From positions 124,001-188,000 of IMG/VR virus record IMGVR_UViG_3300046517_002304: 64,000 nucleotides of DNA; one strand, written 5' to 3'. Positions 27,314 to 46,299 of this stretch are shown here, one piece after another. Every line of letters begins with the position of its first letter. Position 1 is the stretch's first letter. The position numbers and the translations under genes are program-made. The notes under the pieces were generated by a model. That model saw nothing but the letters and a program-made list of their open reading frames with translations, did not search any database and was not told where the DNA came from.

Positions 27314-27937
27314 TTAGGATTTATTACTATTTTCTAGTTCGGTGTTCCAGTAAAGTTCAGACAGGAATGCATCCCATGACTTCGGCATAACTCTACGATC
27401 AATGTTAAATATACTAAATTTTGGTTTAAATGGTTGTCTAATAAGCTTCATCCCGATTTCATCAGGCGTATTGTTGGCCTTGTACCTATTGCATTTGGTG
27501 CAAGCGATTACGCAATTAAACCAATTAGTTTTTCCATTTCTTGATACCGGTATAATGTGATCTATAGACAGCTCTTTGGTCCCAGGTGTAGCCCCACAAT
27601 ATTGACATTGATTGTTATCTCTGTTGTAGATAGCTCTACGATTAAACGGCACCTGTCTATTGGGAAAGCCATCGTATCTGGTTAAGAGTATGACCTCTGG
27701 AATTCTATATGCGGTACTTCTAGTTTTAATAACACTTTCATTATCGTTAGGACGAATTTGCGACCAATCATTCCATGTATAGGTGGAAAAACCGTTAATC
27801 GCGTCAACTATTCTTGCTTTTGGCTCATTGTTCTTATAGGTGCTGAACAGCTTGGAAATAGCCGACTCTAGAGGATTAATGCCAATAGGCATCCATGACT
27901 TATTGAGAACTAAAACCGGATGAGCGGCGACATACAT
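27314..27937 (-). CDS. HNH endonuclease (McrA-like)
   Basis: VLVLNKSW, PEVI, RD...CQYCG, SIDHIIPVSRNG...W.NCV.AC..CN..K. Confidence 0.9.
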   Translation of the reverse strand: MYVAAHPVLVLNKSWMPIGINPLESAISKLFSTYKNNEPKARIVDAINGFSTYTWNDWSQIRPNDNESVIKTRSTAYRIPEVILLTRYDGFPNRQVPFNRRAIYNRDNNQCQYCGATPGTKELSIDHIIPVSRNGKTNWFNCVIACTKCNRYKANNTPDEIGMKLIRQPFKPKFSIFNIDRRVMPKSWDAFLSELYWNTELENSNKS

Positions 27938-28729: not shown

Positions 28730-29467
28730 TTAGCTCCTGAGTTTATTAAAAATTGATTCGCTTAATCGTTCTTTTAACTCTAGGTTCATAGACGGAATCT
28801 CGCCGCCCACAAAGCAAGAGTATAAATAACACAAATTATCCATACCGTTTTTATCGGTGGTTGCCTTCTTTAACTTTAAACTAATTTCTTCATAACTGTC
28901 GTCTAAAAACAAACAACCGCCTGGATTTGATTTTGACATTTTAACAGATGGATTTTTTAAATCCTTAATTCTTCCCACTACAATCTCTGGTTCAGGTATA
29001 ACAAAATCTTCGCTGAAAACTCTGTTATATTTTTTTAGTAGCTTAGATGCATACTGAAGATGCTGTGTTTGATCTTCCCCAACAAGTACTTTTTTAAATC
29101 CTGCTACGTCGTGCGTCATCAAAACTGGATACGTTAATAAATGGGCGCTTGGATTAGACGACGACTTGTATTGTGTCATTCTTTCTAAATCGCCCATTGC
29201 GGATATTGAAAGAAGTTTGAAGTAAAATTCGGCATTAAAAACATCCTTTTGAATTATGATTTTAGAAACGCCAAATTTGTTCAGTAGCTCAATGCTATTC
29301 TTGATTTCCTGCCCAGGCGCATGATAGTTAGCAACTAAAACGCTAGCTCCAGCTTTTCCTGGCAGTATTACCGAGAAATAGTGACCAAGATGCAATTTGC
29401 CTGTTGGCCTGAACCCGCACAATTTATCACCAAAGACACACCATGTTTCTTCTCCTGAAAACCCCAT
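28730..29467 (-). CDS. trpS: compact tryptophanyl-tRNA synthetase (true start may be ATG 29444 via +1 frameshift)
   Basis: GFRPTGKLHLGH (HIGH), LERMTQYK, LLTYPVLMTHD, VGEDQTQH, KMSKS. Confidence 0.88.
   Translation of the reverse strand: MGFSGEETWCVFGDKLCGFRPTGKLHLGHYFSVILPGKAGASVLVANYHAPGQEIKNSIELLNKFGVSKIIIQKDVFNAEFYFKLLSISAMGDLERMTQYKSSSNPSAHLLTYPVLMTHDVAGFKKVLVGEDQTQHLQYASKLLKKYNRVFSEDFVIPEPEIVVGRIKDLKNPSVKMSKSNPGGCLFLDDSYEEISLKLKKATTDKNGMDNLCYLYSCFVGGEIPSMNLELKERLSESIFNKLRS
29427..29456 (-). promoter_or_regulatory. SD + 5-codon ORF (MVCLW*) with candidate +1 frameshift site CUU-UGG
   Basis: AGGAG-N7-ATG GTG TGT CTT TGG TGA; +1 slip at CTT.T joins the trpS frame (GGT GAT AAA TTG). Confidence 0.55.
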
Positions 29468-29493
29468 TTTACACTAAAAACTTTACTTGTCAA
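29466..29493 (-). promoter_or_regulatory. sigma70-like promoter for trpS
   Basis: TTGACA (29493-29488)-N16-TAAAAT (29471-29466). Confidence 0.55.
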
Positions 29494-29728
29494 GGCCCTT
29501 AGATGCAGAATAGCGACAGCGCAAGTAGTAAATCAATCCCGTTGGACCAAGTAATGGCTGCACACTTACAAGCTTATTGGCTATGGATGCCGTATTTAAA
29601 TTTTTAAATAGGGGAATAGACATATGAGAAAACATGTTAATATTTTTCCCGCTACACTTTGCGCATACCTGATGTTCATTTAATGGAACCAGTTTATCGG
29701 ATTTATTTCCACAGTAATCGCATATCAT
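29483..29728 (-). CDS. zinc ribbon fused to a major-capsid-protein segment
   Basis: MICDYCG..CAKC followed by 42 aa with 27 identities to MCP residues 71-112. Confidence 0.8.
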   Translation of the reverse strand: MICDYCGNKSDKLVPLNEHQVCAKCSGKNINMFSHMSIPLFKNLNTASIANKLVSVQPLLGPTGLIYYLRCRYSASKGLDK

Positions 29729-29770: not shown

Positions 29771-31204
29771 ATGCGATTTCGTGCCTACCTAGAGTCGTTC
29801 GGCTCGTTTAATTATAGGGTTCCCAATGACCCAGAAGAGCAATTATACGACTTCTATATGCTTAATTGGCTTAGGGGCAGAAATTCGCTTTATAACAAAG
29901 CTAATCAACATGGGTTGGCTATCTCACCTAAAAAGCCAGAATATGGCGGTGACATGGGCCATGAAGACAAAATAGATTATATGTTAGATGAAGTCGCACA
30001 TACTCTAATCCCCAAGCTTAAATCCGACTTCCTTAAGGCAGTGCTATTCGGCATTACTGCGGAAATGCGGCATGTGCCTCGTGAAATGGGAGATTATAAA
30101 AATTTTTCGGCTAATATAGCAGACGGCGTCGGCGAGAGATACGCAAAAATATACAATGATTTTTTTAGTTATTATAATTATGATAATTTTAAAGACAAAA
30201 TGGCAGAATTTAATAAATCTGTTCCTGTAAAAGACAGAATGTTTAGAAATGTTAAAAATTTCGTAGATCCGCATAATGCCGATTTTCTTCATTATAATAT
30301 GACCGGTAGAATGGCCGCTTATCGCAGTATGTTAAAAGGCGGCTCTACTGAGAGAGATTTCGTAGAAATGGCTAAATTTACGTTTGCGAACGGTAGTTGG
30401 CAGGCTAGCTATGGTGGCCAACCATGGGCAAATGCTTGTGATGGATGGCTGCAATTATATGATTCAAAAGGTGAAAATTCTGATATAGTCGCCATTGATC
30501 ACATTTATGATCTACAGCATAATAATGGTTCTGTTTTAAATAAAGTAGCTAAGTATATTAAGGGGGGAAATACTACATGGCTCAAAACTGCTTTGGATGA
30601 TAAGGCGCAGTCTAATGGTCCGATGGATATAGTGGATAAAGTATCGTCAAGCATGAGAGAACTAGCTTTGCCGGCCATAAAATTAAAATTTGGAACAACG
30701 TATCAAGACAAGGCATCTGCGGAAATTTCACCATATAAAGGCTCTTATGAAAACCAATATTTTTTGACTGGCCATGACTGGAGTGCCTACGAAGGAGCTT
30801 ATCATAGTTCTTCAATTCCTGAATTAAAGTTAGTGCGACTTGGGCTATATCTTGGTTGGTCGCCTAAAAAGGTTACATTAAAGGATATTGAAAGGTTAAA
30901 AAATACTTTAAAAGTTCCTCAGTTAGATGACGCGCGGATAAAGAAAGTGCTTACATCTGAATACAATAATAAAAGAAACATAGAAACTGGTAACTTTAAA
31001 TATGTAAAGGTTAAATTAAGTAGTGATTTAATACGGGAAATAGACAAATTTATAAGGCTAAAAGACACCTGGCTATATGAAGCAGTAGTTAAAAAAATAG
31101 ACAGTGAAACTCATTATGGATATGCAGCATCAAAATACTTATATGGCTACTGCGCATCATTAGTCGGTAAACAAAGAAGTATAGATGAGGTCGTAGAGCC
31201 ATGA
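29771..31204 (+). CDS. putative internal head protein, paralog 1
   Basis: 477 aa; MRFRAYLES; YGGQPW..ACD.W, IDHIYDLQHNNG; TAAATA 4 nt upstream. Confidence 0.7.
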   Translation: MRFRAYLESFGSFNYRVPNDPEEQLYDFYMLNWLRGRNSLYNKANQHGLAISPKKPEYGGDMGHEDKIDYMLDEVAHTLIPKLKSDFLKAVLFGITAEMRHVPREMGDYKNFSANIADGVGERYAKIYNDFFSYYNYDNFKDKMAEFNKSVPVKDRMFRNVKNFVDPHNADFLHYNMTGRMAAYRSMLKGGSTERDFVEMAKFTFANGSWQASYGGQPWANACDGWLQLYDSKGENSDIVAIDHIYDLQHNNGSVLNKVAKYIKGGNTTWLKTALDDKAQSNGPMDIVDKVSSSMRELALPAIKLKFGTTYQDKASAEISPYKGSYENQYFLTGHDWSAYEGAYHSSSIPELKLVRLGLYLGWSPKKVTLKDIERLKNTLKVPQLDDARIKKVLTSEYNNKRNIETGNFKYVKVKLSSDLIREIDKFIRLKDTWLYEAVVKKIDSETHYGYAASKYLYGYCASLVGKQRSIDEVVEP

Positions 31205-32607
31205 GATTCTCTCAATTTATAGAATCTTTTGGTTCATTTAATTATCGTGTTCCCGATGATCCAGAAGAACAATTATATGACTTCTATATGTTGAATTTGC
31301 TAAGAGGCAGAAATTCGCTTTATAACAAGGCTAATCAACATGGCTTAACCATAATGCCTAAGAAGCCAGAGTACGGCGGCGAAATGAATCATGAAGATAA
31401 AGTAGACTACATGCTGGATGAAGTGGCAAAAGTTCTTATACCAAAACTTAAATCAGATTTATTAGAAGCGGTTCTTTTTAGTATAACGGCAGAATTTAGA
31501 CATGGTGGCGACCGAGATACGCAAGAAATACCAATGAGCCATATGACAGATATGATTCGTAGACAAATGGGCGCTAAATATTCTAGAATATTTAGCGATT
31601 TTTTTAACCATTTAGACTCTTCTTTTGATGCATCGTTTAGGCCAAAAATTCAAGCAAATTCTCAATTGATGAAAAACACTATTAACAGTACTCCTATCTA
31701 TAACAGTAGAAGATTGGCATCTTATTCATCGATGGAAAAAAGTACCCATAATGAAAAAGACTTTGTAGAAATGGCTAAATTTGTTTTTGGGGAGGGGGAT
31801 TGGGACAAAGATTACGGTGGTCCTTCATGGGAACAGGCTTGTGATGCATGGCTCCAACTGTATAATTCTAAATCAGAAGATTCAGACATTATAGCGATTG
31901 ATCATATGTACGATATAGAGCACAATACAGGGAACATTCTTGACAAGAGCAATCACTTTTTAAAGAACGGGCAATTTACATGGCTCAGTAATGCCCTTAA
32001 TAAAAAAGCTAGAATTACTTCTCCGATGCAAATCATTGACGATATTTCTCCAGCAATGACACAAATAGCCTTGCCTGCCATAAAGTTAAAGTATGGCCAA
32101 ACATTAGAAGATAAAATGAAGGCTGATACATTTAAAACACAGATCCCAGGAGCTGGGTTTGATGACTTAATTAAAAAGGAATTTGACGAAAATCAAGGAA
32201 TATATGATGCAGGTATTCCTGAACTAAAAATGGCTAGAACTCTTAGGGGAATTTTAGCTGCTTATAAAGTGCGTAGAATTGACTTTAGAATCATTGAATT
32301 AGCTAAGTCTAAAATTAGAGTCCCATTAGACAGTCAAAAAATTAAACAGTTCTTTCAGCAAGAGTATCAAAATTGCAGAAATATAGAAACTGGTAACTTT
32401 GGTCATGTTAAGGTGCTTATGACTAAAGATTTAATATACGAAATACAAAAAAATTTAGAAGATCCATATGGCCATAGATCAGGAATAAAAGACAGAATAG
32501 CCGGTGAAACAAATTATGACGATGAAGTTATTAAGAGTTTAGTAGATTACTGTGAAAAGTTAGTTGAAGATGGCGGAAATGTTAGCTCAATATTAGCGGT
32601 TCGCTAA
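31201..32607 (+). CDS. putative internal head protein, paralog 2
   Basis: 468 aa; MRFSQFIES; first ~100 aa very similar to paralog 1. Confidence 0.7.
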   Translation: MRFSQFIESFGSFNYRVPDDPEEQLYDFYMLNLLRGRNSLYNKANQHGLTIMPKKPEYGGEMNHEDKVDYMLDEVAKVLIPKLKSDLLEAVLFSITAEFRHGGDRDTQEIPMSHMTDMIRRQMGAKYSRIFSDFFNHLDSSFDASFRPKIQANSQLMKNTINSTPIYNSRRLASYSSMEKSTHNEKDFVEMAKFVFGEGDWDKDYGGPSWEQACDAWLQLYNSKSEDSDIIAIDHMYDIEHNTGNILDKSNHFLKNGQFTWLSNALNKKARITSPMQIIDDISPAMTQIALPAIKLKYGQTLEDKMKADTFKTQIPGAGFDDLIKKEFDENQGIYDAGIPELKMARTLRGILAAYKVRRIDFRIIELAKSKIRVPLDSQKIKQFFQQEYQNCRNIETGNFGHVKVLMTKDLIYEIQKNLEDPYGHRSGIKDRIAGETNYDDEVIKSLVDYCEKLVEDGGNVSSILAVR

Positions 32608-33137
32608 GCTTCATTACCCCAGCAATACCAGCCTTCTCTTTTAGCTCTAGCATACATGTCTAATCGTGGTTCTGGCGATAGCTTTTCTACTAGCTTATAG
32701 AAATCATCTGGTTTCTCGCTATGCCTGCCTCTATCCCATGAAAAGCATGTTCCACTAGTAGCCTGTGAATGCCGTCCACCCATTCCAAAAGGATTTCCGT
32801 GTCTACTTCCTACCCGAGACACAAGTATATGTTCTGTATTACATCTAAAACGTCCTACGCCAAGCCCTGGCTTCTTCCAAGTCCAAAGTATGATTGGTTT
32901 AGCCTTCCATGCGCCAGCGACCGTATAGGCCCAATCTACGTGTTGTGCAAGGCACCATATGTATAAGTGTGCCTGTTTGGCAATCGGCGGCTTGATAGAA
33001 CAGATTTCGTCTAAGCTTAATGTGTTATAATGAGATTGTGGACTGCCCTTGGGCGCTTTTCCATTAATAATTGACATTTCTGGTGTCCAAGGCGGGTCAA
33101 CCACTATTGTGCGAAACTCTACATCAGGAAATTGCAT
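32604..33137 (-). CDS. MT-A70 family adenine methyltransferase
   Basis: IVVDPPW, LYIW, W.KPGLGVG..R.NTEH, HSEKP, MYAR..REGW..WGNE. Confidence 0.9.
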   Translation of the reverse strand: MQFPDVEFRTIVVDPPWTPEMSIINGKAPKGSPQSHYNTLSLDEICSIKPPIAKQAHLYIWCLAQHVDWAYTVAGAWKAKPIILWTWKKPGLGVGRFRCNTEHILVSRVGSRHGNPFGMGGRHSQATSGTCFSWDRGRHSEKPDDFYKLVEKLSPEPRLDMYARAKREGWYCWGNEA

Positions 33138-33166: not shown

Positions 33167-33394
33167 ATGAAAACCTGGACCCAATACTGCGAAAATATGC
33201 CAAATTATGCTACCTCTGCTCGTCCGATGACGGCAGGTGGATTTAATGGAACAGTTAACCTAGGGCAGGCTAACTTACAATTAGTTGGGCAAGCATTGCA
33301 GATAGATAGCGGAACTCACAGCATAAGGCTTCCGCTAACATCACAACAGGTTCAGCAGATACAAAAAGAAGTAGGATCAGGATTAGGTAGATAA
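33167..33394 (+). CDS. small putative internal protein (IP-like)
   Basis: MKTWTQYCE; TAAATA 6 nt upstream. Confidence 0.65.
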   Translation: MKTWTQYCENMPNYATSARPMTAGGFNGTVNLGQANLQLVGQALQIDSGTHSIRLPLTSQQVQQIQKEVGSGLGR

Positions 33395-33395
33395 T

Positions 33396-33614
33396 ATGAA
33401 AACTTGGACTCAATATCTAGAGGCTGTAGGCACACCAGCACCAGCAATTTTTATGCCAGGACTCTTTAATGGTCTAACAAACTTGGGGCCAGTAAGCGTA
33501 AGGGTAGTTGGCAATATACTACAAATACAAACCAATAGGGATGCGTCTAATCTAGTTCTTACAATGCCACAGATTCAGCAGCTTAAGCGAGATTTTAACT
33601 TAACGGTTATTTAG
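33396..33614 (+). CDS. small putative internal protein (IP-like), paralog
   Basis: MKTWTQYLE; G.FNG..NLG..VG..LQI..LT..Q.QQ shared with the previous gene. Confidence 0.65.
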   Translation: MKTWTQYLEAVGTPAPAIFMPGLFNGLTNLGPVSVRVVGNILQIQTNRDASNLVLTMPQIQQLKRDFNLTVI

Positions 33615-33821
33615 CTTTTTAATCTTTTCCAGACAATCTGTAACTTCATCTAATTTTTTGCTGGGATACTTACAAGTACCTAGTAGCAGCAAAAGGGCGT
33701 CCTCAACAAAGATCATATCCTTGTTACTTAACTTTTCGTCCTTAGTTGGAGAGCATACAATAAAAAACCAAAGAGCAGCTTCTATGAGTATATAAGCGAT
33801 AATGGCAGCGGCTAATGTCAT
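33600..33821 (-). CDS. small membrane protein
   Basis: N-terminal TM segment. Confidence 0.5.
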   Translation of the reverse strand: MTLAAAIIAYILIEAALWFFIVCSPTKDEKLSNKDMIFVEDALLLLLGTCKYPSKKLDEVTDCLEKIKKLNNR

Positions 33822-34177
33822 CGGAAAGCCTTAGTTGTAGTTTTAATGAAAGATTGATTTTCGCTATAAGATAAGGATTTAATGAGGTTTAAATCTAAGT
33901 ACTTAGTTTTCTTTAAAGGATGAATTGTTCCAACGTGTATTTTAAGAGTATCACCAGCCATGACGTAGACCGTACTGGCAAAATATGATATTGTTATATC
34001 TCCGCATCCTGCAAGCGGCAAAGAACAATACTTACTTACAAATAGAGATGTAGCACTCCAAGCAGATTTTGGGTTGAATATGGCATACATCTTGCCGTCA
34101 TCATCTTTCACTAAATTTACTCTGCGATAATCAGCGTTTGATAATTCTTTGTGACCGTTTAATAGTCCTGCGTACAT
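33818..34177 (-). CDS. tail-protein-like domain + C-terminal LIxSL module
   Basis: ELSNADYRRV..W.ATSL..AGDT resembles 14478-14915; ends KYLDLNLIKSLSYSENQSFIKT. Confidence 0.6.
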   Translation of the reverse strand: MYAGLLNGHKELSNADYRRVNLVKDDDGKMYAIFNPKSAWSATSLFVSKYCSLPLAGCGDITISYFASTVYVMAGDTLKIHVGTIHPLKKTKYLDLNLIKSLSYSENQSFIKTTTKAFR

Positions 34178-34261
34178 AATTGTTCTCCTGATATTTTATC
34201 GGCTCTCATGCAAATCAATCTTAATGACGATAGATTATTGTTATGAAAAGGAGATGCTGGA

Positions 34262-34582
34262 ATGACCGATAAAGAACTTATTGATTGGGCGCGGTTGATG
34301 TTAGGCGAACCGATTATAAAATTAGAGATAGATGATGAGCAAGTTCAATTTATAATTGACACAGCTAGAACTAACATTAAAGATGCTCAGTTTAAAACTA
34401 ATAAAATGGTTAAGAAAGCAGTATACAACGATTTGGTCCGTGAAGGCGTTCTAGCGTTATCTTGTTTGATGCTGGATAGGATCAATGGAGCATTTGCTCA
34501 TCCAGTGGAAGAAGAATGGTATCGGGGCGGCAAAGAAAAAGTTGAAGCATGGAAAGAGAAGTTAAAGGAGATTAAGGAATAA
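34262..34582 (+). CDS. miniature T4 gp13-like neck protein
   Basis: LIDWARLMLGEPIIKLEIDDEQV and EGVLAL..LML.RI match gp13-family terminal helices; 106 aa. Confidence 0.55.
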   Translation: MTDKELIDWARLMLGEPIIKLEIDDEQVQFIIDTARTNIKDAQFKTNKMVKKAVYNDLVREGVLALSCLMLDRINGAFAHPVEEEWYRGGKEKVEAWKEKLKEIKE

Positions 34583-34583
34583 C

Positions 34584-34946
34584 ATGAAGGAAGTTAAATC
34601 AGTAGAAGAAATAAAGTGTACCGACGACTTCAATAAGGAAGTGATTGTCAGCAAGCAATGTCTGCACACTGGTGTGATTTATTACTTTCTTAAAGGTGCT
34701 TGGACACCAGTTTATCCGCAAGAGGATGGCACATTCAGGTATCCATATAATTGCAATACAGTTATGCAGATAATGACATTGACGCCTGTAGTGGAGCGAA
34801 AGTCTTTGGTTGAAAGGCTCAGGGATCAGTCTAATAGTCCATCTTGGATTGTAAGACTTAGTAGTCGTCTTATGATTTTTAAATTGAAATGCGAATCTTT
34901 ATTAGATTCAGAAAAACCTTGGGTTGAAAGGTGGTTGGGGGAATGA
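34584..34946 (+). CDS. hypothetical protein
   Basis: 120 aa, SD AAGGA. Confidence 0.55.
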   Translation: MKEVKSVEEIKCTDDFNKEVIVSKQCLHTGVIYYFLKGAWTPVYPQEDGTFRYPYNCNTVMQIMTLTPVVERKSLVERLRDQSNSPSWIVRLSSRLMIFKLKCESLLDSEKPWVERWLGE

Positions 34947-35134
34947 TTGTAATTAGTGCTGAGTATAAGGAAATACCTATTAGCCAACCTATGGCTGAAT
35001 TTAAAAGAATTAGCATTCCTTTGATAAGAAGGATTTATCCTAGTTTAATTGACATGAGAAGTGATCTTTTCAGTATTAGAGGAGATTATGTTATTAGAAC
35101 GATAGATAGCGCTTATGAACATGGCTATGATTGA
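34943..35134 (+). CDS. small protein carrying major-capsid residues 65-83
   Basis: AEFKRISIPLIRRIYPSLI vs MCP ANFKRISIPLVRRIFPQLI (15/19); ATGA coupling with the upstream gene. Confidence 0.75.
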   Translation: MIVISAEYKEIPISQPMAEFKRISIPLIRRIYPSLIDMRSDLFSIRGDYVIRTIDSAYEHGYD

Positions 35135-35146
35135 TCGTATGATATT

Positions 35147-35365
35147 ATGAAGCTAAAAACAACTTGGAAATTTTGCGAAGAAATGAAAGAGATTCCAGAT
35201 AATACACGGCGGGATTTATTGCGCAATCTACTAAAGGACGAAGATGCATCATGGGGAACATCTAGAAGCGCAGAAGAAATGGAAAAACAATTAGATTATT
35301 TAATGGGATGTGGCGACAATCCTAGCGTAGCTCCAGTCAATGAAGAAATCAAAATCGGGACTTGA
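35147..35365 (+). CDS. small protein resembling the MCP N-terminus
   Basis: Ungapped K...TW-x8-I.D.T.R.....L alignment to MCP residues 17-48. Confidence 0.5.
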   Translation: MKLKTTWKFCEEMKEIPDNTRRDLLRNLLKDEDASWGTSRSAEEMEKQLDYLMGCGDNPSVAPVNEEIKIGT

Positions 35366-35665
35366 ACTATAATCAAGGTAGCCGAAGTCCATTCTACTTG
35401 GCCAGATGCCTTCTAGTGTGTAGGACTTTTCTCCGAATGATAGGACGCCGGTGCCAGTCGTCTTCTCTCCGTTATAATGATAGCAGTGAGACATAATCTC
35501 AAATATGCACTTAGGTTCGCCCATTTGATCACCATCATCGTGGAATTTGGTCTTTAGGCTTTCTCCAGAGTTGTTCTCAAGAATTTCTGGGTTAATGACT
35601 TGGAAGTTGTCTATGTGGCATTCTAGGCCATTAGGGAACGTAAGCTCCAATGTGTAATTGTTCAT
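35300..35665 (-). CDS. miniature T4 gp19-like tail tube protein
   Basis: GTGVL..YTLEGIWPSRMDFGYLDYSSS...WSY matches the gp19 C-terminal motif; 121 aa. Confidence 0.6.
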   Translation of the reverse strand: MNNYTLELTFPNGLECHIDNFQVINPEILENNSGESLKTKFHDDGDQMGEPKCIFEIMSHCYHYNGEKTTGTGVLSFGEKSYTLEGIWPSRMDFGYLDYSSSPDFDFFIDWSYARIVATSH

Positions 35666-35768: not shown

Positions 35769-37616
35769 ATGGGAAAAGAACGAGTAAGAACAACGATAGA
35801 ATATATTGCCAAGGCCAAAAATAAATGGAATGGATATTTTACATATCCGAATACTATTTTTATTGGCCGGTTTGGCAAAATTGAATTTGAGTGTCCAGTA
35901 CATGGCGCTATGACAATGACGGCTAGAGCACATCTAGATTCTGGTTGTAACAAATGTAATGGATATTTTAAGCACACTGGGGCAACGGCAAAAGCCAAAA
36001 TGCTCCAAATACATGGGTATTTTTGCGACTATTCTAAAATACCCGATGAATTAGAATTCGGAGTCAATACTATTGTAGAAATAGGTTGCCCTAAACATGG
36101 ATTCTTTAAAATCAAAATTGAAGACCATTTTAATGCGGTGCATCCATGCCGTAGCTGTGCCAATGAAGCTAGGGGAATTGCTAATAAAAAAACAACAGAA
36201 GAATGGATATCTGAAGCAAAACTTAAATGGGGCCAAACGTGTAATTATGACAAATCGGTTTATGTAAATAAAGAAACCTATATTGATATTTATTGTATTT
36301 ATCATGGGTGGATAAAACAGAAACCGAATAATCATGTAGAAAATGGATGCCATCATTGTAGCGGCCGTGGTATTGGCAAGCATGACAGATATAGCTTTAT
36401 TAAAAGGGCGATACAAATTAATGGATATATTTATGATTACTCTAAAGTATTAGATAATTTTAGTGGATTAAACTCTGTTATAGAACTAGGATGTCCAACG
36501 CATGGGTGGTTTAAAGTTGTAGCGGCTAATCATCTTACAGAAGGACGAGGATGCTCAAAATGTAATGGTGGTGTTTTTTATACACATAATGACTTCTTAG
36601 AAAAGGCAAATAAAAAGCATAATAATAAATTCAAATATCTATCAAAATATACTAGATCACATGATCCAATTACGATAGAGTGCTCTAAGCACGGTGTATT
36701 TGAACAGTTGGCCTATGTCCATCTTCAGTCAATCCATGCTTGCCAGAAGTGTGCTGCTGAATTAGGGCAATCCGCTGGCGAAAACGAGGTAGCGGATTAT
36801 ATCGCCAATTTAGGCATTAATATTATTAGAAATGACAATACTTTTCTTGGGAAGTCAAAAGAAATAGATATTTACTTACCCGATCAAAAGGTTGGAATTG
36901 AATATTGTGGCCTTTATTACCATAGGGAAGGCATGCAGACATATAAATTTAACCATAATATTAAAACTAATTTAGCAGATGAAAAAAATATATTTTTAAT
37001 TCATTTGTTTGACAAGGAATGGAAAGAGCAAAAAGAAATTGTTAAATCTAGGATATCTGGCATATTGGGGAAAAATAAGACGATATATGCTAAAAACACA
37101 GAGATAGTTCAATTACATAAATACGAAAAAGATAAATTTTTACAGGAAACGCATATACAAGGAAAAGATAATTCCAGTATTTATTTCGGCTTAAAATATA
37201 AGGATCAGATTGTTTCATGCATGACATTTGGGCACCCAAGATTTAATAAAAACTATAACTGGGAAATGCTTAGGTTTAGTTCTATTTTGTATACCCATAT
37301 AGTGGGCGGAGCTAGCAAGCTGTTGTCTCACTTTAGAAAAATTTATCCAGGAACAATTATTTCTTACGCTGACAGGAGATGGTCACAAGGAAAGTTGTAT
37401 TACATATTAGGATTTAACTTAGATAAAGTTACAGAGCCTAGTTATCATTATTATAATGTTTCTACACATGCATTTCATAATCGTCTAAAATTTCAAAAGT
37501 ATAAGCTTAAAGATATGCCTTATTATGATGAAAAATTAACCGAAGAAGAAATTATGATGTTAAATGGATATGATAGAGTTTGGGATGCAGGACAAATGCG
37601 GTTTGTTCTTAAGTAA
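35769..37616 (+). CDS. Hef-like/DUF723-repeat homing endonuclease
   Basis: Repeated YDYSK..CP.HG.F...H...CxxC modules; EIDIYLP..GIEYCG.YYH nuclease; C-terminal GGASKLL..ISYADRRWS domain. Confidence 0.8.
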   Translation: MGKERVRTTIEYIAKAKNKWNGYFTYPNTIFIGRFGKIEFECPVHGAMTMTARAHLDSGCNKCNGYFKHTGATAKAKMLQIHGYFCDYSKIPDELEFGVNTIVEIGCPKHGFFKIKIEDHFNAVHPCRSCANEARGIANKKTTEEWISEAKLKWGQTCNYDKSVYVNKETYIDIYCIYHGWIKQKPNNHVENGCHHCSGRGIGKHDRYSFIKRAIQINGYIYDYSKVLDNFSGLNSVIELGCPTHGWFKVVAANHLTEGRGCSKCNGGVFYTHNDFLEKANKKHNNKFKYLSKYTRSHDPITIECSKHGVFEQLAYVHLQSIHACQKCAAELGQSAGENEVADYIANLGINIIRNDNTFLGKSKEIDIYLPDQKVGIEYCGLYYHREGMQTYKFNHNIKTNLADEKNIFLIHLFDKEWKEQKEIVKSRISGILGKNKTIYAKNTEIVQLHKYEKDKFLQETHIQGKDNSSIYFGLKYKDQIVSCMTFGHPRFNKNYNWEMLRFSSILYTHIVGGASKLLSHFRKIYPGTIISYADRRWSQGKLYYILGFNLDKVTEPSYHYYNVSTHAFHNRLKFQKYKLKDMPYYDEKLTEEEIMMLNGYDRVWDAGQMRFVLK

Positions 37617-37627
37617 TATTAGTCGAA

Positions 37628-37655
37628 TAAAAAACCCCCGATTTCTCGGGGGTTT
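37628..37655 (-). terminator. intrinsic terminator of the capsid gene
   Basis: AAACCCCCGA-GAAA-TCGGGGGTTTTTT on the minus strand. Confidence 0.9.
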
Positions 37656-37683: not shown

Positions 37684-39135
37684 TTAGATGCTGAAATTGT
37701 TGATAGCGATGGTAGCGTAGAAGCGTGCACCGTTATTTAGTAATTTAAGTCCGTATCTTGTCATCAAGCCTCTACGTGGGCAGAAGCTATTAGGGTCAAG
37801 TACCAGTGGAGTCTGCATTAAAGGAACGTATGGGCAATAGAAGAACCCTGAATCCATATAAGTATCACCCTTATAACCCATGAGTAGGTTATTGGTTGGG
37901 AACTGTGGATCCTTATAAAGCTTCCAACGGTTGCTGACAGTACCGACATACTGAACGCCTAGCGAGCTAGTGAACGATTCTGAAGGTGCTGGAGCGAAAC
38001 CTGCTGTGGCTGTCTCAAAGATTGAGGCAACTTCAGGTGAGCAGATAATCCAGTTTGCACCGCTACGTAGCGTTTTCTTATGGATGATGTTGCTAACCTG
38101 TGAAACCTTAACGAATAGGGCTTCGTACTTTTCCTTAACGGTATCACCTAGGGCAGTGTTGTAATCCCAAGTGACGTTAGTACCAGCGTTGTTACGGAGG
38201 TTGGTGATGATTTCACGGTCAATTTCAAGATTGATTTCTTGAGCAAGAACGGTCGTCAATTCCTGTTCCGCATCTAGCGAATACTGTGAACGTAAGTCCT
38301 GTTGAGCTTCAAAGCTCCAGACAGCGCGTAGCTTACGGGTAACGGCGGTAATGGTTTCCTGTTCAACCGTTAGATTAACTTCGGGCTGATCAGTATTGCA
38401 TTCCATGTTATAGTCGTAAGTGACGACGATGCTGTTAGTGCTAGGATCGCTTGACCAAGTTAGAGTGATGGCACCAGTCGTGAGATTGATGCTACCAGCG
38501 GTAACGTTTGGTGAATTGCTCGTAGAACTAATAGTAAAGGTACCCGACGCATCAATGGTGAAGGTCTGAATGGCAGTGCTACCCTGGTAGATAGTACCTG
38601 ATTCAGTTCCAGCAAGAATTGGCGTGTGCTTTAGAGTGTAAGTAAGAGTAGTTGTACCACCAGCGTTGGTGACGGTTTCAAGACTGACAGTCTGGCTAGA
38701 ATAGAAAATATCAAGATTTACTAGACCGCTTGAGAGCTGTTGTAGTGAAAGAGCATCGTCTGTTGGGAAACTAGACTTGTTAGTCGCACCTAGTGTAGCA
38801 CCCTTGTCAGTCGCATAGCGAAAGCGGAGGTAATAAACTAGACCGACTGGACCGAGTAATGGCTGAACAGAAACGATCTTGTTAGCGATTAGCTGTGGGA
38901 AAATACGACGAACGAGGGGGATACTAATACGTTTGAAGTTAGCGACATCGCCTGCGGTCGTGCTTGAAGATTCGTTGAGGTTGCATGATAGTTCCTGATT
39001 TTCCATTAGGATGGCAGTGTTCTGACGAACTGTCTTATCCTTAATGTCGTTCAGGAGACCACGGTCGCCCCAAGTTTTTTCGCACTTGGCACCTTCGTGT
39101 AAAAATTCCCCTTTGGCTGTACCAAAATTTGACAT
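37684..39135 (-). CDS. gp23: major capsid protein, T4 gp23 family
   Basis: ENQE, VRR..P.LIA...VQP..GP.G, RKLRAVWSFEAQQDL, EINLEIDREI, FYCPYVPL, F.P..GLMTRYG; probable cleavage at LNE55. Confidence 0.96.
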   Translation of the reverse strand: MSNFGTAKGEFLHEGAKCEKTWGDRGLLNDIKDKTVRQNTAILMENQELSCNLNESSSTTAGDVANFKRISIPLVRRIFPQLIANKIVSVQPLLGPVGLVYYLRFRYATDKGATLGATNKSSFPTDDALSLQQLSSGLVNLDIFYSSQTVSLETVTNAGGTTTLTYTLKHTPILAGTESGTIYQGSTAIQTFTIDASGTFTISSTSNSPNVTAGSINLTTGAITLTWSSDPSTNSIVVTYDYNMECNTDQPEVNLTVEQETITAVTRKLRAVWSFEAQQDLRSQYSLDAEQELTTVLAQEINLEIDREIITNLRNNAGTNVTWDYNTALGDTVKEKYEALFVKVSQVSNIIHKKTLRSGANWIICSPEVASIFETATAGFAPAPSESFTSSLGVQYVGTVSNRWKLYKDPQFPTNNLLMGYKGDTYMDSGFFYCPYVPLMQTPLVLDPNSFCPRRGLMTRYGLKLLNNGARFYATIAINNFSI

Positions 39136-39223: not shown

Positions 39224-40135
39224 CTATTTATTATCGTAAGCGAGTTTGCGCCATTGAGCTTCAATAGAAGTTGTATCTTCATCAATTCTGGTTGGTTCTT
39301 CTGTCGCTACCGCTTCTTTAAGAACGACAACTTCTTGTCGGCTCTTATCGTTAACAACAACGCCCTTACCCTCTACTGTCTTCTTCTTTTCGCTTCTTAC
39401 CTTTTCAGTGCCTTCGGAAATAACCTGTGCTGAGGCACGAACTTGTTCATTTAGCTTATCGCGTTCCGCTGTTAGGCGGTTAGCTCTGGCTTCTAATACC
39501 TTGACCTGTTGCTTGGCTTCAGTTACCTGACGGCCTAGCTCTTCGGCTTTGCTAGCTGTTACGCTGGCGTAATCTTCGTCGCTGAGCCAATCAGATGCTA
39601 GATTGAGAACTTTGTCCCAAGCTAGTTTGTGCTCAAGCATGTATGGGTCATTAAGAATCTGTGCTTTGGCCATTTCGTGTAGCTCTTCTTCCTTGACGCT
39701 TAGGAACTGGTCAATCTTGTCAACTAGGTCAGTCTTAACTGCGTGTAGTTCACGTTCTTTGGCTTCGTTGATGGTTAGCTCAAGCTCTTCGTTCTTCTTG
39801 CGTTCGGCAAGAATTAGATCTTTGGCTTGTTCATGAGCCTCTTCTAGCTGTACTTCAAACTCTTCGCGCTGTGTTTCAAGACGATTCTTGAAGTCAACGA
39901 TAATTTCATAAGCTTCGTTATATCCCTTTAGGGCAACCTTCTCAGCTTCAAGCTTCTCAGCTTCAACTGTCTTATAGGCTGATTCAAGATTAGCATTATA
40001 TTCGGTTTCTAGTTCAGCTCTCGCTCCGTCTAGGAATTCGCTGACAGCTTCAGTAAGCTTGGCGCGATCACCTTCTGGTACTAGGGCTTCTAGAGCCTGG
40101 AAAACTTTGCTTTTTGCGTCTGTATTCTTAGTCAT
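39224..40135 (-). CDS. prohead scaffold/core protein (gp22-like)
   Basis: Acidic coiled-coil protein between protease and MCP. Confidence 0.8.
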   Translation of the reverse strand: MTKNTDAKSKVFQALEALVPEGDRAKLTEAVSEFLDGARAELETEYNANLESAYKTVEAEKLEAEKVALKGYNEAYEIIVDFKNRLETQREEFEVQLEEAHEQAKDLILAERKKNEELELTINEAKERELHAVKTDLVDKIDQFLSVKEEELHEMAKAQILNDPYMLEHKLAWDKVLNLASDWLSDEDYASVTASKAEELGRQVTEAKQQVKVLEARANRLTAERDKLNEQVRASAQVISEGTEKVRSEKKKTVEGKGVVVNDKSRQEVVVLKEAVATEEPTRIDEDTTSIEAQWRKLAYDNK

Positions 40136-40814
40136 TGTTTAGGTTCTCTCTAATTAATTGTGATTCCTTGTTAATCATATGTCCCATAAAGGAAATTAAA
40201 GTATTAACATTTACTTTATTTAGGGATGCTGTCTCATTTTTTATTTGTATATTCTCTGAATTAATGGTTGAAACTGACTCAACTTTACGTGCAATAGCAC
40301 GAATTTCAGATGGGTTGTTGACAATATCAAAGGTTACTAGGTTATAATTGTCGTTGATTTCAAGAACTCCGTCTGCATTAGTAGTTCCCGAACCTACACC
40401 TCTTGTGCTCACACCAACCGTAATATTTGATTCTAGTAAAGCCTTAAGAACCTTACCGTTTGGAGTATTTAGAACTTCAGCATTGCCCCAAAGTTCATTC
40501 CCCTCCCACCATAGCTTGGTTACAACCGCGCAAGCTGTTTCAAGCTTAACTACACTTGTATCTGGATGGTCAAGACTAGAGATTAAAGCTCTCTGATCTA
40601 TGAATTTCTGTAGACGATTTACATTCTGTTCTAGAATTGATTTCTTATACTTACGCTTATTCTGATTAACGGTCTCGGCGACACTAAAAATGCCTGTAAA
40701 GACGGTTGGTCCACCCTTGTGGGACTCATTTAAATTCAGTGTGGCATAGCCGCCGTTGTCTAGAAGGAGATAATCGCTCATATGTTTTTGATCTTTACAA
40801 AAAGGGTCTGACAT
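40128..40814 (-). CDS. gp21: prohead protease, T4 gp21 family (start possibly 40781)
   Basis: NQNKRKY, LDHP, LNTPNG, GVSTRGVGS, TFDIVNNPS. Confidence 0.92.
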   Translation of the reverse strand: MSDPFCKDQKHMSDYLLLDNGGYATLNLNESHKGGPTVFTGIFSVAETVNQNKRKYKKSILEQNVNRLQKFIDQRALISSLDHPDTSVVKLETACAVVTKLWWEGNELWGNAEVLNTPNGKVLKALLESNITVGVSTRGVGSGTTNADGVLEINDNYNLVTFDIVNNPSEIRAIARKVESVSTINSENIQIKNETASLNKVNVNTLISFMGHMINKESQLIRENLNND

Positions 40815-42724: not shown

Positions 42725-44044
42725 GTGCCTAAAAAACTTACTACTGAACAGTTCGTTGAAAAAGCTATAAAAGTGCATGGGGAGCGGTACGATTATAGTT
42801 TGGTGGAGTATATTAGCAATAAGGTGATGGTGCAGATAATTTGTCCATTACACGGTATTTTTGAACAAAGACCCGATGGACATTTATCTAGCATTGTTGG
42901 CGGGTGTCCCGAATGTGGGCGGATACAAGTCATACAAACCAAAAAAGACCATGGCTTAAGTCATACCGTAGAATATCAAACGTGGCATAGAATGATGAGC
43001 AGATGTTATAATAAAAACCATCATCATTATTTGGACTATGGAGCACGAGGTATTATGGTTTGTGAAAGGTGGCATGATTTTTTAAACTTTTTAGAAGACA
43101 TGGGACTAAGACCAGTAAATTTATCTTTAGATAGGATTGATTGTAATGGCAATTATTGTCCTGAAAATTGTAGATGGTCAAGCAATAAAGAACAACTTAA
43201 TAATAGAAGAAATGTTAAAAAATATACCGTTAATGGCATGACCAAAACGCTTACTGGATGGTGTGAAGAAACTGGATTATCTTATAAATGTTTAAGTAAT
43301 AGGTTTCGCAACGGGTGGAGCATTGAAGATGCTATTAATACGCCTAAAATTACCTATAACAAGAAGGATGGCAATGAAGTTAAAAAGAAAAAATCTTCAT
43401 CTAAAGAGGTAATAATTATTAAAGAAAAAACACTTGAAGATTTTAAAAATAAATGTAATTTTAAAGATATATCTGGCAAAAAAATCGGCACTTTGACTGC
43501 GATTAAGCCGCTTGGAATTAATTGCTACGGACAAGTGGTATGGCTTTTTACATGTGAGTGCGGAGATAAAATTAATTATATATGCAGAGGCCGCCTATGC
43601 GAAAGATGTAATTCACCAAGGTTTGCCAAGATTACTAATCCCAAAGAGTATGGCACATGGTGTCGTATGATTGAGAGATGTAAAAATGACATAGATTATA
43701 TTAATAAAAACGTTACTGTTTGTCCAAGATGGCTAGATGGTTTTGATAACTTTCTTGCCGACATGGGGATGTCGCCTCATTATAAATGTAGTCTAGATAG
43801 AATTAATAATAACTTAGGTTATTACAAAGGAAATTGTAGGTGGGCTACCGATGAGCAGCAACAAAGAAATAAAAGCGATACTATCATGCTTACAGTTAAT
43901 GGCGAAACCAAACCGCTTGTTGAATGGTGTGAAATTACGGGAATGTCCAGATCTTGCCTAAGGTCAAGAATTCAATCCGGCTGGTCTGTAGAAGATGCTG
44001 TACTAACTCCTTTTCGTAAAATTAAAAGAAAAAACCCTGTATAA
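42725..44044 (+). CDS. homing endonuclease: DUF723-like + two HNH modules
   Basis: VHGERYDYS..CPLHG; SLDRIDCNGNYCPENCRW and SLDRINNNLGYYKGNCRW. Confidence 0.85.
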   Translation: MPKKLTTEQFVEKAIKVHGERYDYSLVEYISNKVMVQIICPLHGIFEQRPDGHLSSIVGGCPECGRIQVIQTKKDHGLSHTVEYQTWHRMMSRCYNKNHHHYLDYGARGIMVCERWHDFLNFLEDMGLRPVNLSLDRIDCNGNYCPENCRWSSNKEQLNNRRNVKKYTVNGMTKTLTGWCEETGLSYKCLSNRFRNGWSIEDAINTPKITYNKKDGNEVKKKKSSSKEVIIIKEKTLEDFKNKCNFKDISGKKIGTLTAIKPLGINCYGQVVWLFTCECGDKINYICRGRLCERCNSPRFAKITNPKEYGTWCRMIERCKNDIDYINKNVTVCPRWLDGFDNFLADMGMSPHYKCSLDRINNNLGYYKGNCRWATDEQQQRNKSDTIMLTVNGETKPLVEWCEITGMSRSCLRSRIQSGWSVEDAVLTPFRKIKRKNPV

Positions 44045-46132: not shown

Positions 46133-46297
46133 ATGAGCAATTATTGGATTGATTTGATAAAAAGAGAAGAAGAATTAGAAAAATTACGCAAAGAACAAGA
46201 ACGCCGCGATTTTGAGATAATTTATCAAGAACTTCAAATGCGAGAAAAGCTAAAGGCCCTTTGGAACTCACAAAGGAAACAAGGCCAGAAAGTTTAG
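46133..46297 (+). CDS. 54-aa coiled-coil protein (not in ORF track)
   Basis: MSNYWIDLIKREEELEKLRKEQERR...; TATATA 5 nt upstream; stops 2 nt before the terminase ATG. Confidence 0.55.
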   Translation: MSNYWIDLIKREEELEKLRKEQERRDFEIIYQELQMREKLKALWNSQRKQGQKV

Positions 46298-46299
46298 TA

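What the first reader, a model, noticed from the sequence alone, without database searches (positions are those of the whole stretch)
33818..35665. Island of miniaturised virion-protein mimics (capsid, neck, tail tube, tail protein): candidate decoy or assembly-interference system
Seen: within 1.9 kb, five of six ORFs (63-121 aa) resemble structural proteins. 34943 copies MCP residues 65-83 (15/19 identical). 35147 aligns ungapped to MCP 17-48. 33818 resembles the tail protein at 14478. 34262 looks like gp13 neck helices and 35300 like the gp19 tube C-terminus (these two from family motifs; the full genes are outside the window). The pieces are intact ORFs, some with SDs or ATGA coupling. They lie on both strands and out of parental order, and the capsid copy differs at most synonymous sites, so this is not a decaying duplicate operon. 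Established: bacterial defences sense these protein classes (Lit and CapRel: capsid; DSR2: tail tube), and phage DSAD1 blocks DSR2 by competing with the tube protein. Inference: a panel of decoys that occupy host pattern sensors, or dominant-negative subunits that poison assembly of competing phages.
Basis: partly seen in the sequence, partly recalled or inferred. Interest (0 to 1): 0.92.

Follow-up and report, generated by a model that had tools for sequence, protein, structure and literature searches.

The report
Free-standing capsid and neck motif mini-proteins
In a 511-kb soil phage, two of the six flagged small genes really carry short conserved pieces of the capsid and neck proteins, and the capsid piece belongs to a widespread, apparently undescribed family of tiny huge-phage proteins, usually found among translation genes; the other four genes show no such ancestry.

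Summary
The window comes from a 511-kb soil/rhizosphere huge phage with a T4-type capsid gene at 37684-39135(-).

Confirmed:
- ORF 34943-35134 copies capsid residues 64-83 (15/20 identical, synonymous sites scrambled).
- ORF 34262-34582 is homologous to the first ~45 residues of T4 neck protein gp13.

At chance level:
- 35147 against the capsid protein
- 33818 against 14478
- 35300 against tail tube gp19

New findings:
- A better capsid-motif gene lies outside the flagged range at 29483-29728(-). It is a zinc ribbon fused to capsid residues ~60-112.
- Both copies belong to a large family of 58-125 aa "mini-Gp23" proteins in huge phages, with dozens of complete members on contigs up to 673 kb.
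- The family keeps, almost unchanged, the capsid N-arm segment that in T4 is the Gol peptide, which binds EF-Tu.
- Many members add a lysine-rich, acidic-aromatic tail.
- In five other lineages the gene sits in one conserved cluster with aminoacyl-tRNA synthetases, peptidyl-tRNA hydrolase, an HNH protein and release factor 1. Copy 29483 is the syntenic orthologue (next to a Trp/Tyr-RS-like gene and that HNH); 34943 is a degenerate extra copy.

My best reading is a free Gol/N-arm peptide that engages EF-Tu or the translation apparatus. Capsid-assembly and decoy roles remain open. The "panel of five mimics" is not supported.

The parts
34943..35134 (+). Degenerate mini-Gp23 gene, 63 aa from the ATGA-coupled ATG (a GTG at 34931 gives 67 aa). 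Residues 17-36, encoded at 34991-35050, are the first half of the capsid N-arm/Gol motif. The central VSVQPLLGPTG part is missing. The C-terminus (IRTID..YE) faintly resembles the family tail.
   Evidence: A4 profile E 2e-8. A possible orthologue lies in LR756511.1.
34262..34582 (+). Mini-gp13 gene, 106 aa, predicted all-helical. The N-terminal ~45 aa are homologous to the N-terminus of T4 gp13 (head-tail adaptor Ad2). The gp13 swing domain and C-terminal arm are absent.
   Evidence: Model: pLDDT 85.9, pTM 0.80. Fold match. A good AGGAG ribosome-binding site is visible.
33818..34177 (-). ORFan, 119 aa. No detectable relation to any virion protein or to ORF 14478.
   Evidence: Coding score 0.39.
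33600..33821 (-). 73-aa ORF with a hydrophobic N-terminal segment, ATGA-coupled to 33818-34177. ORFan.
34584..34946 (+). ORFan, 120 aa, lying between the two motif-bearing genes in the same + strand run.
35147..35365 (+). ORFan, 72 aa, acidic. The claimed match to the capsid N-terminus is at chance level. Its 3' end overlaps 35300-35665 by 66 nt.
35300..35665 (-). ORFan, 121 aa. The tail-tube resemblance is not significant. The language-model neighbours are DUF2804-like, which is a lead only.
29483..29728 (-). Canonical mini-Gp23 gene of this phage, outside the flagged range. 81 aa: an N-terminal CxxC...CxxC zinc ribbon fused to capsid residues ~60-112, with no tail.
   Evidence: 62% over 50 aa to the relative's capsid protein; z = 26.8; E 6.7e-19.
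28730..29467 (-). Short class-I Trp/Tyr-tRNA-synthetase-like gene (245 aa, HIGH and KMSKS motifs present) directly downstream of 29483.
   Evidence: (PF00579, 9.7e-29).
27314..27937 (-). HNH_5 protein, 207 aa. It is the orthologue (43-51% identity over full length) of the HNH gene that accompanies mini-Gp23, PTH2 and RF-1 in the other lineages, and so marks this stretch as the syntenic cluster.
38797..38952 (-). The parental segment: capsid codons 62-113 (N-arm and start of the E-loop), the equivalent of T4 gp23 residues ~96-134, which contain Gol.
37684..39135 (-). Intact T4-type major capsid protein, 483 aa.
35769..37616 (+). HNH homing-endonuclease-like gene (615 aa), convergent with the capsid gene. 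It separates the capsid gene from the islet.
   Evidence: (phrog_559, 5.6e-117).
37632..37655 (.). GC-rich hairpin with T-runs on both sides, between the capsid gene and the endonuclease gene. Probably a bidirectional terminator.

Best explanation
The flagged 1.9 kb is a lineage-specific islet of short accessory genes. It lies between the capsid gene (plus a homing endonuclease) and a DNA methyltransferase in a 511-kb soil huge phage. Two of its genes are exapted, free-standing interface motifs of virion proteins. The other four or five are ORFans.

ORF 34943 is a degenerate paralogue of a large 'mini-Gp23' family. These are proteins of 58-125 aa that consist of little more than the capsid N-arm segment, homologous to the T4 Gol peptide, kept almost invariant. 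Most also carry a lysine-rich tail with a W-R-x-I-x-D/E-P-W/F-E motif. The phage's canonical copy is 29483-29728.

Proposed mechanism (inferred, not shown): the mini-protein is an unfolded peptide ligand. It presents the Gol/N-arm segment to the partner that the nascent capsid protein normally engages. By T4 precedent that partner is EF-Tu (domains II/III). The mini-protein would thereby tune or protect translation elongation during takeover, alongside the neighbouring synthetase, PTH2 and RF-1 genes. Copy 34943 has lost half of the motif, so it probably has a reduced or altered role.

ORF 34262 is a folded helical protein. It keeps the gp13 N-terminal helices that in T4 touch gp14 and the portal clip, so it most likely binds a neck or portal partner.
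For: Shown:
- Homology of 34943 and 29483 to the capsid N-arm. The family profile against the capsid clade gives hhalign 99.9%, E 1.7e-34.
- The family aligns to T4 gp23 residues 96-134.
- According to the review PMC3014915, Gol is a 29-residue region, the most conserved part of gp23. It binds EF-Tu domains II/III, prefers EF-Tu:GDP and inhibits the GTPase.
- Family size: 297 profile hits, with dozens of complete small proteins on contigs of 390-673 kb, and an 85-member Atlas cluster.
- The motif consensus in the mini-proteins equals the capsid consensus, although the capsid proteins as a whole are only 61-66% identical.
- dN/dS is 0.24-0.38 where computable; dS is otherwise saturated.
- Conserved gene order in five other lineages: synthetase ... 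~170 aa ORF - mini-Gp23 - small ORF - PTH2 - ... - HNH_5 - ... - RF-1. The window shares the HNH_5 orthologue and places a synthetase next to 29483.
- AlphaFold predicts no autonomous fold (pLDDT 65, pTM 0.24), as expected for a peptide ligand.

For 34262. In T4, gp13 I24/I25 contact gp14 and E47/D51 contact the portal clip (PMC12929587). The PII residues and an acidic residue are aligned.
Against: - No binding, expression or timing data exist. No RNA run holds this phage.
- The EF-Tu link rests on one distant model phage, and the exact Gol boundaries come from my memory.
- Gene neighbourhood in huge phages is weak functional evidence, and one subfamily (L022) sits in a different context.
- The N-arm also docks on neighbouring capsid subunits in mature T4 heads (PMC9958956), so a capsid partner would explain the conservation equally well.
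- The flagged copy, 34943, lacks the motif's centre and the canonical tail, and it is not in the translation cluster.
- The closest sequenced relative, LR756511.1, has no full mini-Gp23.
Confidence: 0.38

Rival explanations
1. Capsid-assembly factor or interference. The free N-arm peptide docks in trans on capsid-protein subunits where a neighbour's N-arm normally binds. It could act as a cement or timer in the phage's own head maturation, or as a dominant-negative against co-infecting relatives. The mini-gp13 would similarly cap or occupy the portal or gp14.
For: - In T4 the N-terminal region of cleaved gp23 is disordered in the prohead. It later forms an N-arm that binds neighbouring subunits (PMC9958956).
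- The mini-protein motif is near-identical to that of the resident capsid clade.
- 34943 and 34262 sit 2.5-3.4 kb from the capsid gene.
- In L028 a mini-gp13 homologue lies two ORFs upstream of a short Gp23-like gene.
- The part of gp13 that is retained carries gp14- and portal-contacting residues.
Against: - The canonical family position is among translation genes, not head genes, in five other lineages plus the window.
- The motif stays invariant while capsid bodies diverge to 61-66% identity. This argues for a more conserved partner than the capsid itself.
- The shared C-terminal tag also occurs on unrelated small proteins of the same cluster.
Confidence: 0.2
2. Anti-defence decoy. The mini-proteins occupy host sensors that recognise the conserved capsid N-arm (Lit-like or CapRel-like) or neck proteins, without triggering them.
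For: - The Gol segment is a proven trigger epitope for the Lit protease (PMC3014915).
- Capsid proteins are direct triggers of CapRel (PMC9712102, listed).
- The motif is presented as an unfolded peptide.
- The islet is lineage-specific and variable, as counter-defence loci often are.
Against: - In the only characterised case, free Gol peptide activates Lit rather than blocking it.
- The family is not in a typical variable anti-defence island. It sits in a conserved, syntenic cluster.
- No sensor gene or host is known.
- Three of the five supposed decoys are not mimics at all.
Confidence: 0.15
3. No function. 34943 is a leftover of recombination or homing-endonuclease-driven conversion with a capsid gene, and the islet is drifting junk DNA with chance ORFs.
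For: - An HNH endonuclease lies between the islet and the capsid gene.
- 34943 has lost the centre of the motif and the tail.
- The islet is absent from relatives at 61-66% capsid identity.
- Four ORFs have no homologues anywhere searched.
Against: - All ORFs are intact, with coding-like hexamer usage in the right frame.
- Genes are coupled by ATGA overlaps and have ribosome-binding sites.
- Nucleotide identity to the resident capsid gene is only 57%, while the peptide is preserved.
- 34943 carries the YPSLI signature, seen in 16/63 mini-proteins and 0/29 capsid proteins.
- A similar 80-aa ORF exists near a mini-gp13 homologue and a PTH2-like ORF in LR756511.1.
- 34262 gives a confident fold.
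Confidence: 0.12

Closest known systems
Gol peptide region of T4 major capsid protein gp23 (Gol-Lit exclusion; EF-Tu binding)
   Same: It is the homologous segment: the family profile aligns to T4 gp23 residues 96-134. It is the most conserved part of T4-type capsid proteins. In experiments it acts as a peptide rather than a folded domain (PMC3014915), which fits the unfolded prediction.
   Different: Gol is an internal part of a 521-aa capsid protein and has been studied only as an artificial fragment. Here the segment is encoded as a separate natural gene. It often carries its own tail, and in the window a zinc ribbon. It sits among translation genes. EF-Tu binding is untested.
T4 gp13 head-tail adaptor (Ad2; phrog_211, PF26809)
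   Same: The N-terminal ~45 residues of 34262 are homologous. They superpose at 2.1 A. They include the positions that contact gp14 and the portal clip in T4.
   Different: 34262 is 106 aa against 309 aa for gp13. It lacks the swing/anchor domain and the C-terminal arm that inserts into the portal clip. The remainder is a family-specific helical bundle. Its homologue in LR756511.1 lies in a non-structural context.
Phage-encoded inhibitors of sensors of structural proteins
   Same: Small phage proteins whose proposed role involves the recognition surface of a virion protein.
   Different: In the window, sequence derivation from the virion protein is demonstrable, but no sensor, host or protective effect is known.
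Capsid paralogues such as T4 gp24 (vertex protein), and satellite capsid-redirecting proteins (for example P4 Sid; from my own knowledge)
   Same: Extra capsid-related or capsid-binding genes that modify assembly.
   Different: gp24 is a full HK97-fold protein, and Sid is unrelated in sequence to the capsid protein. The mini-proteins keep only ~45 residues of an extended arm and do not fold alone.

Membership tests
Mini-Gp23 (free-standing capsid N-arm/Gol module; family defined here, alignment A4) | Contains the capsid N-arm motif (FKRISIPL...VSVQPLLGPTG...YYLR.RY) | tested here: met
   29483: full motif, A4 profile E 7.8e-19. 34943: first half only, E 2e-8.
Mini-Gp23 (free-standing capsid N-arm/Gol module; family defined here, alignment A4) | A complete small protein (58-125 aa) with its own start and stop, not a truncated capsid gene | tested here: met
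   Both ORFs lie inside a 511-kb contig, and the intact capsid gene is elsewhere.
Mini-Gp23 (free-standing capsid N-arm/Gol module; family defined here, alignment A4) | Lysine-rich linker plus C-terminal W-R-x-I-x-D/E-P-W/F-E tail (main subfamily) | tested here: not met
   The tail HMM finds no window ORF at E <= 5. 29483 ends right after the motif. 34943 has only a faint IRTID..YE resemblance.
Mini-Gp23 (free-standing capsid N-arm/Gol module; family defined here, alignment A4) | Synteny with the synthetase / PTH2 / HNH_5 / RF-1 cluster | tested here: met
   Met for 29483: a tRNA-synt_1b gene is adjacent, and the HNH_5 orthologue (43-51% identical) lies 1.5 kb downstream. Not met for 34943.
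Functional major capsid protein (PF07068 Gp23, HK97 fold) | P and A domains of the HK97 fold, ~450-520 aa | tested here: not met
   Only 20-50 residues align. The model is mostly coil with one short helix.
T4 Gol peptide (EF-Tu ligand, Lit cofactor) | Sequence homology to gp23 residues ~93-122 | tested here: met
   hhalign of A2 against T4 gp23: residues 96-134, E 2.9e-6.
T4 Gol peptide (EF-Tu ligand, Lit cofactor) | Binds EF-Tu domains II/III | not testable with these tools
   Needs biochemistry. Only the T4 precedent is available.
Head-tail adaptor Ad2 / T4 gp13 | N-terminal helices with the LG.P.I..EL...Q motif | tested here: met
Head-tail adaptor Ad2 / T4 gp13 | Swing/anchor domain and the C-terminal arm that inserts between portal clip helices | tested here: not met
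   The alignment stops at gp13 residue 50. The protein has only 106 aa. The function of the arm is described in PMC12929587.
Tail tube protein gp19 (for ORF 35300) | Significant profile match to gp19-type tube proteins | tested here: not met
   Pfam: no hit. phrog_4542: E 0.14. T-even gp19 HMM: E 3.1, rank 6 of the window's ORFs.
Recent duplicate or gene-conversion tract of the resident capsid gene | High nucleotide identity to the resident gene | tested here: not met
   34/60 and 84/150 nucleotides identical, with most conserved residues using different codons.

The most novel reading that the evidence does not exclude
Huge phages encode the capsid N-arm/Gol segment as a separate, tagged mini-protein whose job is to bind EF-Tu (or another core translation factor). 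It would be part of a phage translation-takeover cluster that also holds synthetases, PTH2 and RF-1. This would give a physiological meaning to the 25-year-old observation that T4 gp23 binds EF-Tu. It would also explain why this segment is the most conserved part of T4-type capsid proteins. A parallel family of free gp13 N-terminal modules suggests that cutting interface motifs out of virion proteins is a recurrent way of making small regulators or decoys.
Probability: 0.3. Interest if true: 0.8.

Novelty: new variant of a known kind. Interest (0 to 1): 0.6.

Why it matters
If the mini-Gp23 proteins bind EF-Tu, they would be the first natural stand-alone Gol-type ligands. They would also be a new class of phage translation modulators, and a handle on why the capsid N-arm is so strongly conserved. 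If they instead bind capsids or host sensors, they would be natural peptide inhibitors or decoys built from a virion protein's own interface.

In either case a widespread family is currently hidden under a capsid-domain label. The source names that exist read 'hypothetical protein', and the automatic label is 'Gp23 domain'. Such genes can be miscounted as capsid genes in metagenomic g23 or PF07068 surveys.

The shared C-terminal RSIDDE-type tag on unrelated small proteins in the same clusters hints at a common docking or targeting system in these phages.

Tried and rejected
1. Internal similarity of every islet ORF to every window ORF (BLASTP with word size 2, Smith-Waterman with shuffles, capsid-clade HMM). 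Only 34943 and 29483 are related to the capsid protein.

2. I tested whether the family tail derives from the capsid C-terminal strand (W-R/K-x-Y-x-D-P), which would make the mini-protein an internally deleted capsid protein. The tail HMM against capsid proteins scores no better than against shuffles, so I rejected this.

3. gp19 test for 35300. The pairwise hit looked promising, but the profile test is at chance level.

4. Homologue searches for 33818, 34584 and 35300 in the phage collection found nothing meaningful. The PDB sequence search found nothing. The Atlas gave no lead for 33818 and only a DUF2804-like lead for 35300.

5. Synteny of the islet in relatives with 61-66% capsid identity: absent within 10-20 kb of their capsid genes.

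6. Expression and population variation. No RNA run holds the phage. The four DNA runs laid down (of six that hold it) carry the identical strain with no differences, so no selection test was possible from them.

7. A T4 late-promoter motif (TATAAATA) and sigma-70-like sites are not enriched. No tRNAs are present.

8. A tree of the 52-residue motif is unresolved and cannot show one or several origins.

9. Literature searches for a prior description of free-standing Gp23-motif proteins found none. The original Gol papers are not held.
Full report
GENOME AND SETTING

The window belongs to IMG/VR contig UViG_3300046517_002304 (511 kb). The same strain is present in several soil and rhizosphere metagenomes. 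Its capsid protein (37684-39135, minus strand, 483 aa) is of the T4 gp23 type (phrog_138, 4e-83). The best match among deposited phage records is the 595-kb uncultured phage LR756511.1, at 61% identity.

The head module is recognisable:
- prohead protease, 40128-40814
- a scaffold-position gene, 39224-40135 (conserved next to the capsid gene in relatives; no family hit)
- large terminase, 46261-48027
- portal, 48935-51430

An HNH homing-endonuclease-like gene (35769-37616) converges on the capsid gene across a strong hairpin. T4 has the same layout, with segD downstream of gene 23. The flagged islet (33818-35665) lies between this endonuclease and a DNA methyltransferase (32604-33137). GC content is the same as in the rest of the window.

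ARE THE ORFs REAL?

All named ORFs have positive hexamer coding scores in the annotated frame, and that frame is the best of six. Several have AGGAG-type ribosome-binding sites or ATGA overlaps. The near-identical islet also appears on a contig from a second sample (L014). However, 35147-35365 and 35300-35665 overlap by 66 nt at their 3' ends, so one of the two may be shorter or spurious.

THE FIVE CLAIMED RESEMBLANCES

Two hold.

1. ORF 34943 carries capsid residues 64-83 with 15/20 identical (z = 12.8; capsid-clade HMM E 2.8e-8). 11 of the 15 conserved residues use different codons.

2. ORF 34262 belongs to a family of 106-250 aa proteins found by an exhaustive phmmer search.
- 12 of 13 members hit the PHROG for T4 gp13, 'head-tail adaptor Ad2'. 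The T4 record uses that same name for gp13.
- hhalign against T4 gp13 gives 94.7% probability over residues 5-50.
- The AlphaFold model is confident and all-helical (pLDDT 86, pTM 0.80). Its only virion-related structural match is 43 residues on gp13 of the T4 portal-neck complex, at 2.1 A.

Three do not hold.
- 35147 against the capsid N-terminus.
- 33818 against 14478. 14478 is in any case head-like, not tail-like.
- 35300 against gp19.

A SECOND, BETTER CAPSID-MOTIF GENE, AND A FAMILY

Scanning the window with the capsid proteins revealed ORF 29483-29728 (minus strand, 81 aa). It is a CxxC...CxxC zinc ribbon followed by ~50 residues that match capsid residues ~60-112 (E 6.7e-19).

Database searches with this ORF, with 34943 and then with a profile returned 297 hits. 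Dozens of these are complete proteins of 58-125 aa on long contigs of 390, 477, 602 and 673 kb. The sources leave them unnamed or call them 'hypothetical protein'. The ESM Atlas has an 85-member cluster whose representative is 87 aa.

The architecture, in order:
- an optional piece of the capsid propeptide
- the N-arm motif, whose consensus is identical to the capsid consensus except for one position
- a short linker
- a lysine run
- a W-R-x-I-x-D/E-P-W/F-E tail

A smaller subfamily instead ends in D-W-A-K-E-G-F and occurs in tandem arrays (L022).

Synonymous sites between members are mostly saturated. Where computable, dN/dS is 0.24-0.38. ORF 34943 matches one member (P0009) at 83% over 24 residues. 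It carries a YPSLI signature found only in mini-proteins (16/63, against 0/29 capsid proteins). So it descends from the mini-protein lineage and not from the resident capsid gene. It has, however, lost the central VSVQPLLGPTG part, and its tail is barely recognisable.

GENOMIC CONTEXT OF THE FAMILY

In five distinct lineages (L016, L019-21, L025, L026, L027) the gene sits in the same co-directional cluster:
- class-I aminoacyl-tRNA synthetase(s)
- a ~170-190 aa ORF in the upstream slot, which is a Cys-rich protein in L019, L025 and L026
- mini-Gp23
- in three lineages (L025-L027), a small ORF whose start overlaps the mini-Gp23 stop
- peptidyl-tRNA hydrolase PTH2 (not detected in L019-21)
- a ~170 aa ORF
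- a ~205 aa HNH_5 protein
- release factor 1

The window has the orthologous HNH_5 gene (27314-27937, 43-51% identical over its full length). It also has a short Trp/Tyr-tRNA-synthetase-like gene directly downstream of 29483. So 29483 is the syntenic orthologue, and 34943 is an additional copy 5 kb away.

In LR756511.1 no full member exists. But an 80-aa ORF similar to 34943 (pairwise E 1e-6), a mini-gp13 homologue and a PTH2-like ORF lie within 6 kb of each other. The mini-gp13 family is not adjacent to mini-Gp23 in the other loci.

WHAT THE SEGMENT IS

The family aligns to T4 gp23 residues 96-134. This is the N-arm of the mature capsid protein. It is disordered in the prohead and docks on neighbouring subunits after expansion (PMC9958956). 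It also contains the Gol peptide. According to the review PMC3014915, Gol:
- is a 29-residue region and the most conserved part of gp23
- binds EF-Tu domains II/III
- prefers EF-Tu:GDP
- inhibits the GTPase
- enables cleavage of EF-Tu by the Lit protease

The residue numbers 93-122 for Gol are from my memory. AlphaFold predicts no autonomous fold for a canonical member (pLDDT 65, pTM 0.24), and there is no structural match. This fits a peptide that folds on a partner.

MECHANISM

The following is inference.

The motif stays invariant in proteins that lack the rest of the capsid fold. It does so across lineages whose capsid bodies have diverged to 61-66% identity. The constraint must therefore come from an external, highly conserved partner. 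EF-Tu is the only experimentally known partner of this segment, and the gene's conserved neighbours act on tRNA and the ribosome. I therefore favour a free Gol-type ligand of EF-Tu or the translation apparatus (about 0.35-0.4).

The rivals are trans-docking on capsid subunits (about 0.2), a sensor decoy (about 0.15) and non-functional remnants for the flagged copy (about 0.1). The decoy idea is weakened because free Gol activates Lit rather than blocking it.

For 34262, the retained gp13 helices include the residues that contact gp14 (I24/I25) and the portal clip (E47/D51) in T4 (PMC12929587; alignment). A neck- or portal-binding role is therefore the most economical guess.

COMPARISON AND NOVELTY

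The closest known things are the T4 Gol region and T4 gp13 themselves. The new element is that the motifs are encoded as separate, conserved small genes. I found no description of this in three literature searches.

The flagged islet as a 'panel of five mimics' is not supported. As a pointer to two families of free-standing virion-motif proteins, it is a worthwhile find. The function of the four remaining ORFs is unknown.

Noticed in passing
L016:5635-6076, 8794-9834; L025:7033-7269, 10191-10547, 12508-13053; L019:7339-7776; L026:10230-10520: At least eight otherwise unrelated small proteins in the mini-Gp23/PTH2 clusters end in the same C-terminal tag: an aromatic residue, then R-S-I-D-D/E, often as the very last residues and preceded by lysines. 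It looks like a shared docking or targeting signal. No window ORF carries it.
   Followed up: partly
window 29771-31204 and 31201-32607 (+): Two adjacent large paralogues (477 and 468 aa, 47% identical) with no Pfam match. They separate the translation-type cluster from the islet.
   Followed up: no
window 33167-33394 and 33396-33614 (+): Tandem small paralogues (75 and 72 aa, 40% identical, both starting MKTWTQY) just upstream of the flagged islet.
   Followed up: no
window 35769-37616 (+), 42725-44044 (+); L013:12669-13286: HNH homing-endonuclease-like genes flank the head module. One converges on the capsid gene exactly as segD does in T4. A relative (L013) has a related endonuclease fragment downstream of its capsid gene.
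   Followed up: partly
window 28730-29467 (-): The Trp/Tyr-tRNA-synthetase-like gene has only 245 aa. The catalytic HIGH and KMSKS motifs are present, but at this length it probably lacks the C-terminal anticodon-binding part.
   Followed up: no
window 35300-35365: The convergent ORFs 35147-35365 (+) and 35300-35665 (-) overlap by 66 nt. Both look coding by hexamer score.
   Followed up: no
L022:3243-4335: A tandem array of four small ORFs (79, 91, 101 and 85 aa), all ending in W-A/P-x-E/D-G-F. Two of them carry the capsid N-arm motif. The context is different (AAA_5, DUF2201_N, AdoMet decarboxylase).
   Followed up: partly
L028:7313-9186: A mini-gp13 homologue (159 aa, PF26809) lies two small ORFs upstream of a short 344-aa Gp23-like gene with a diverged N-arm. 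This may be a vertex-type paralogue.
   Followed up: no
protein P0129: One family member has the lysine run and Y-R-S-I-D..W module at the N-terminus and the capsid motif after it. This circular permutation suggests that the two parts are independent modules.
   Followed up: no
window 29483-29728 compared with L019:6501-7004, L025:9389-9964, L026:9483-10004: In L019, L025 and L026 the gene just upstream of mini-Gp23, with overlapping or closely adjacent stop and start, is a Cys-rich (zinc-binding-like) protein. In the window a zinc ribbon is fused to the mini-Gp23 itself. This may be a gene fusion that links the two functionally. Homology between the zinc parts was not established.
   Followed up: no
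window 3085-10827 (-): A very large ORF of 2580 aa. I did not examine it.
   Followed up: no
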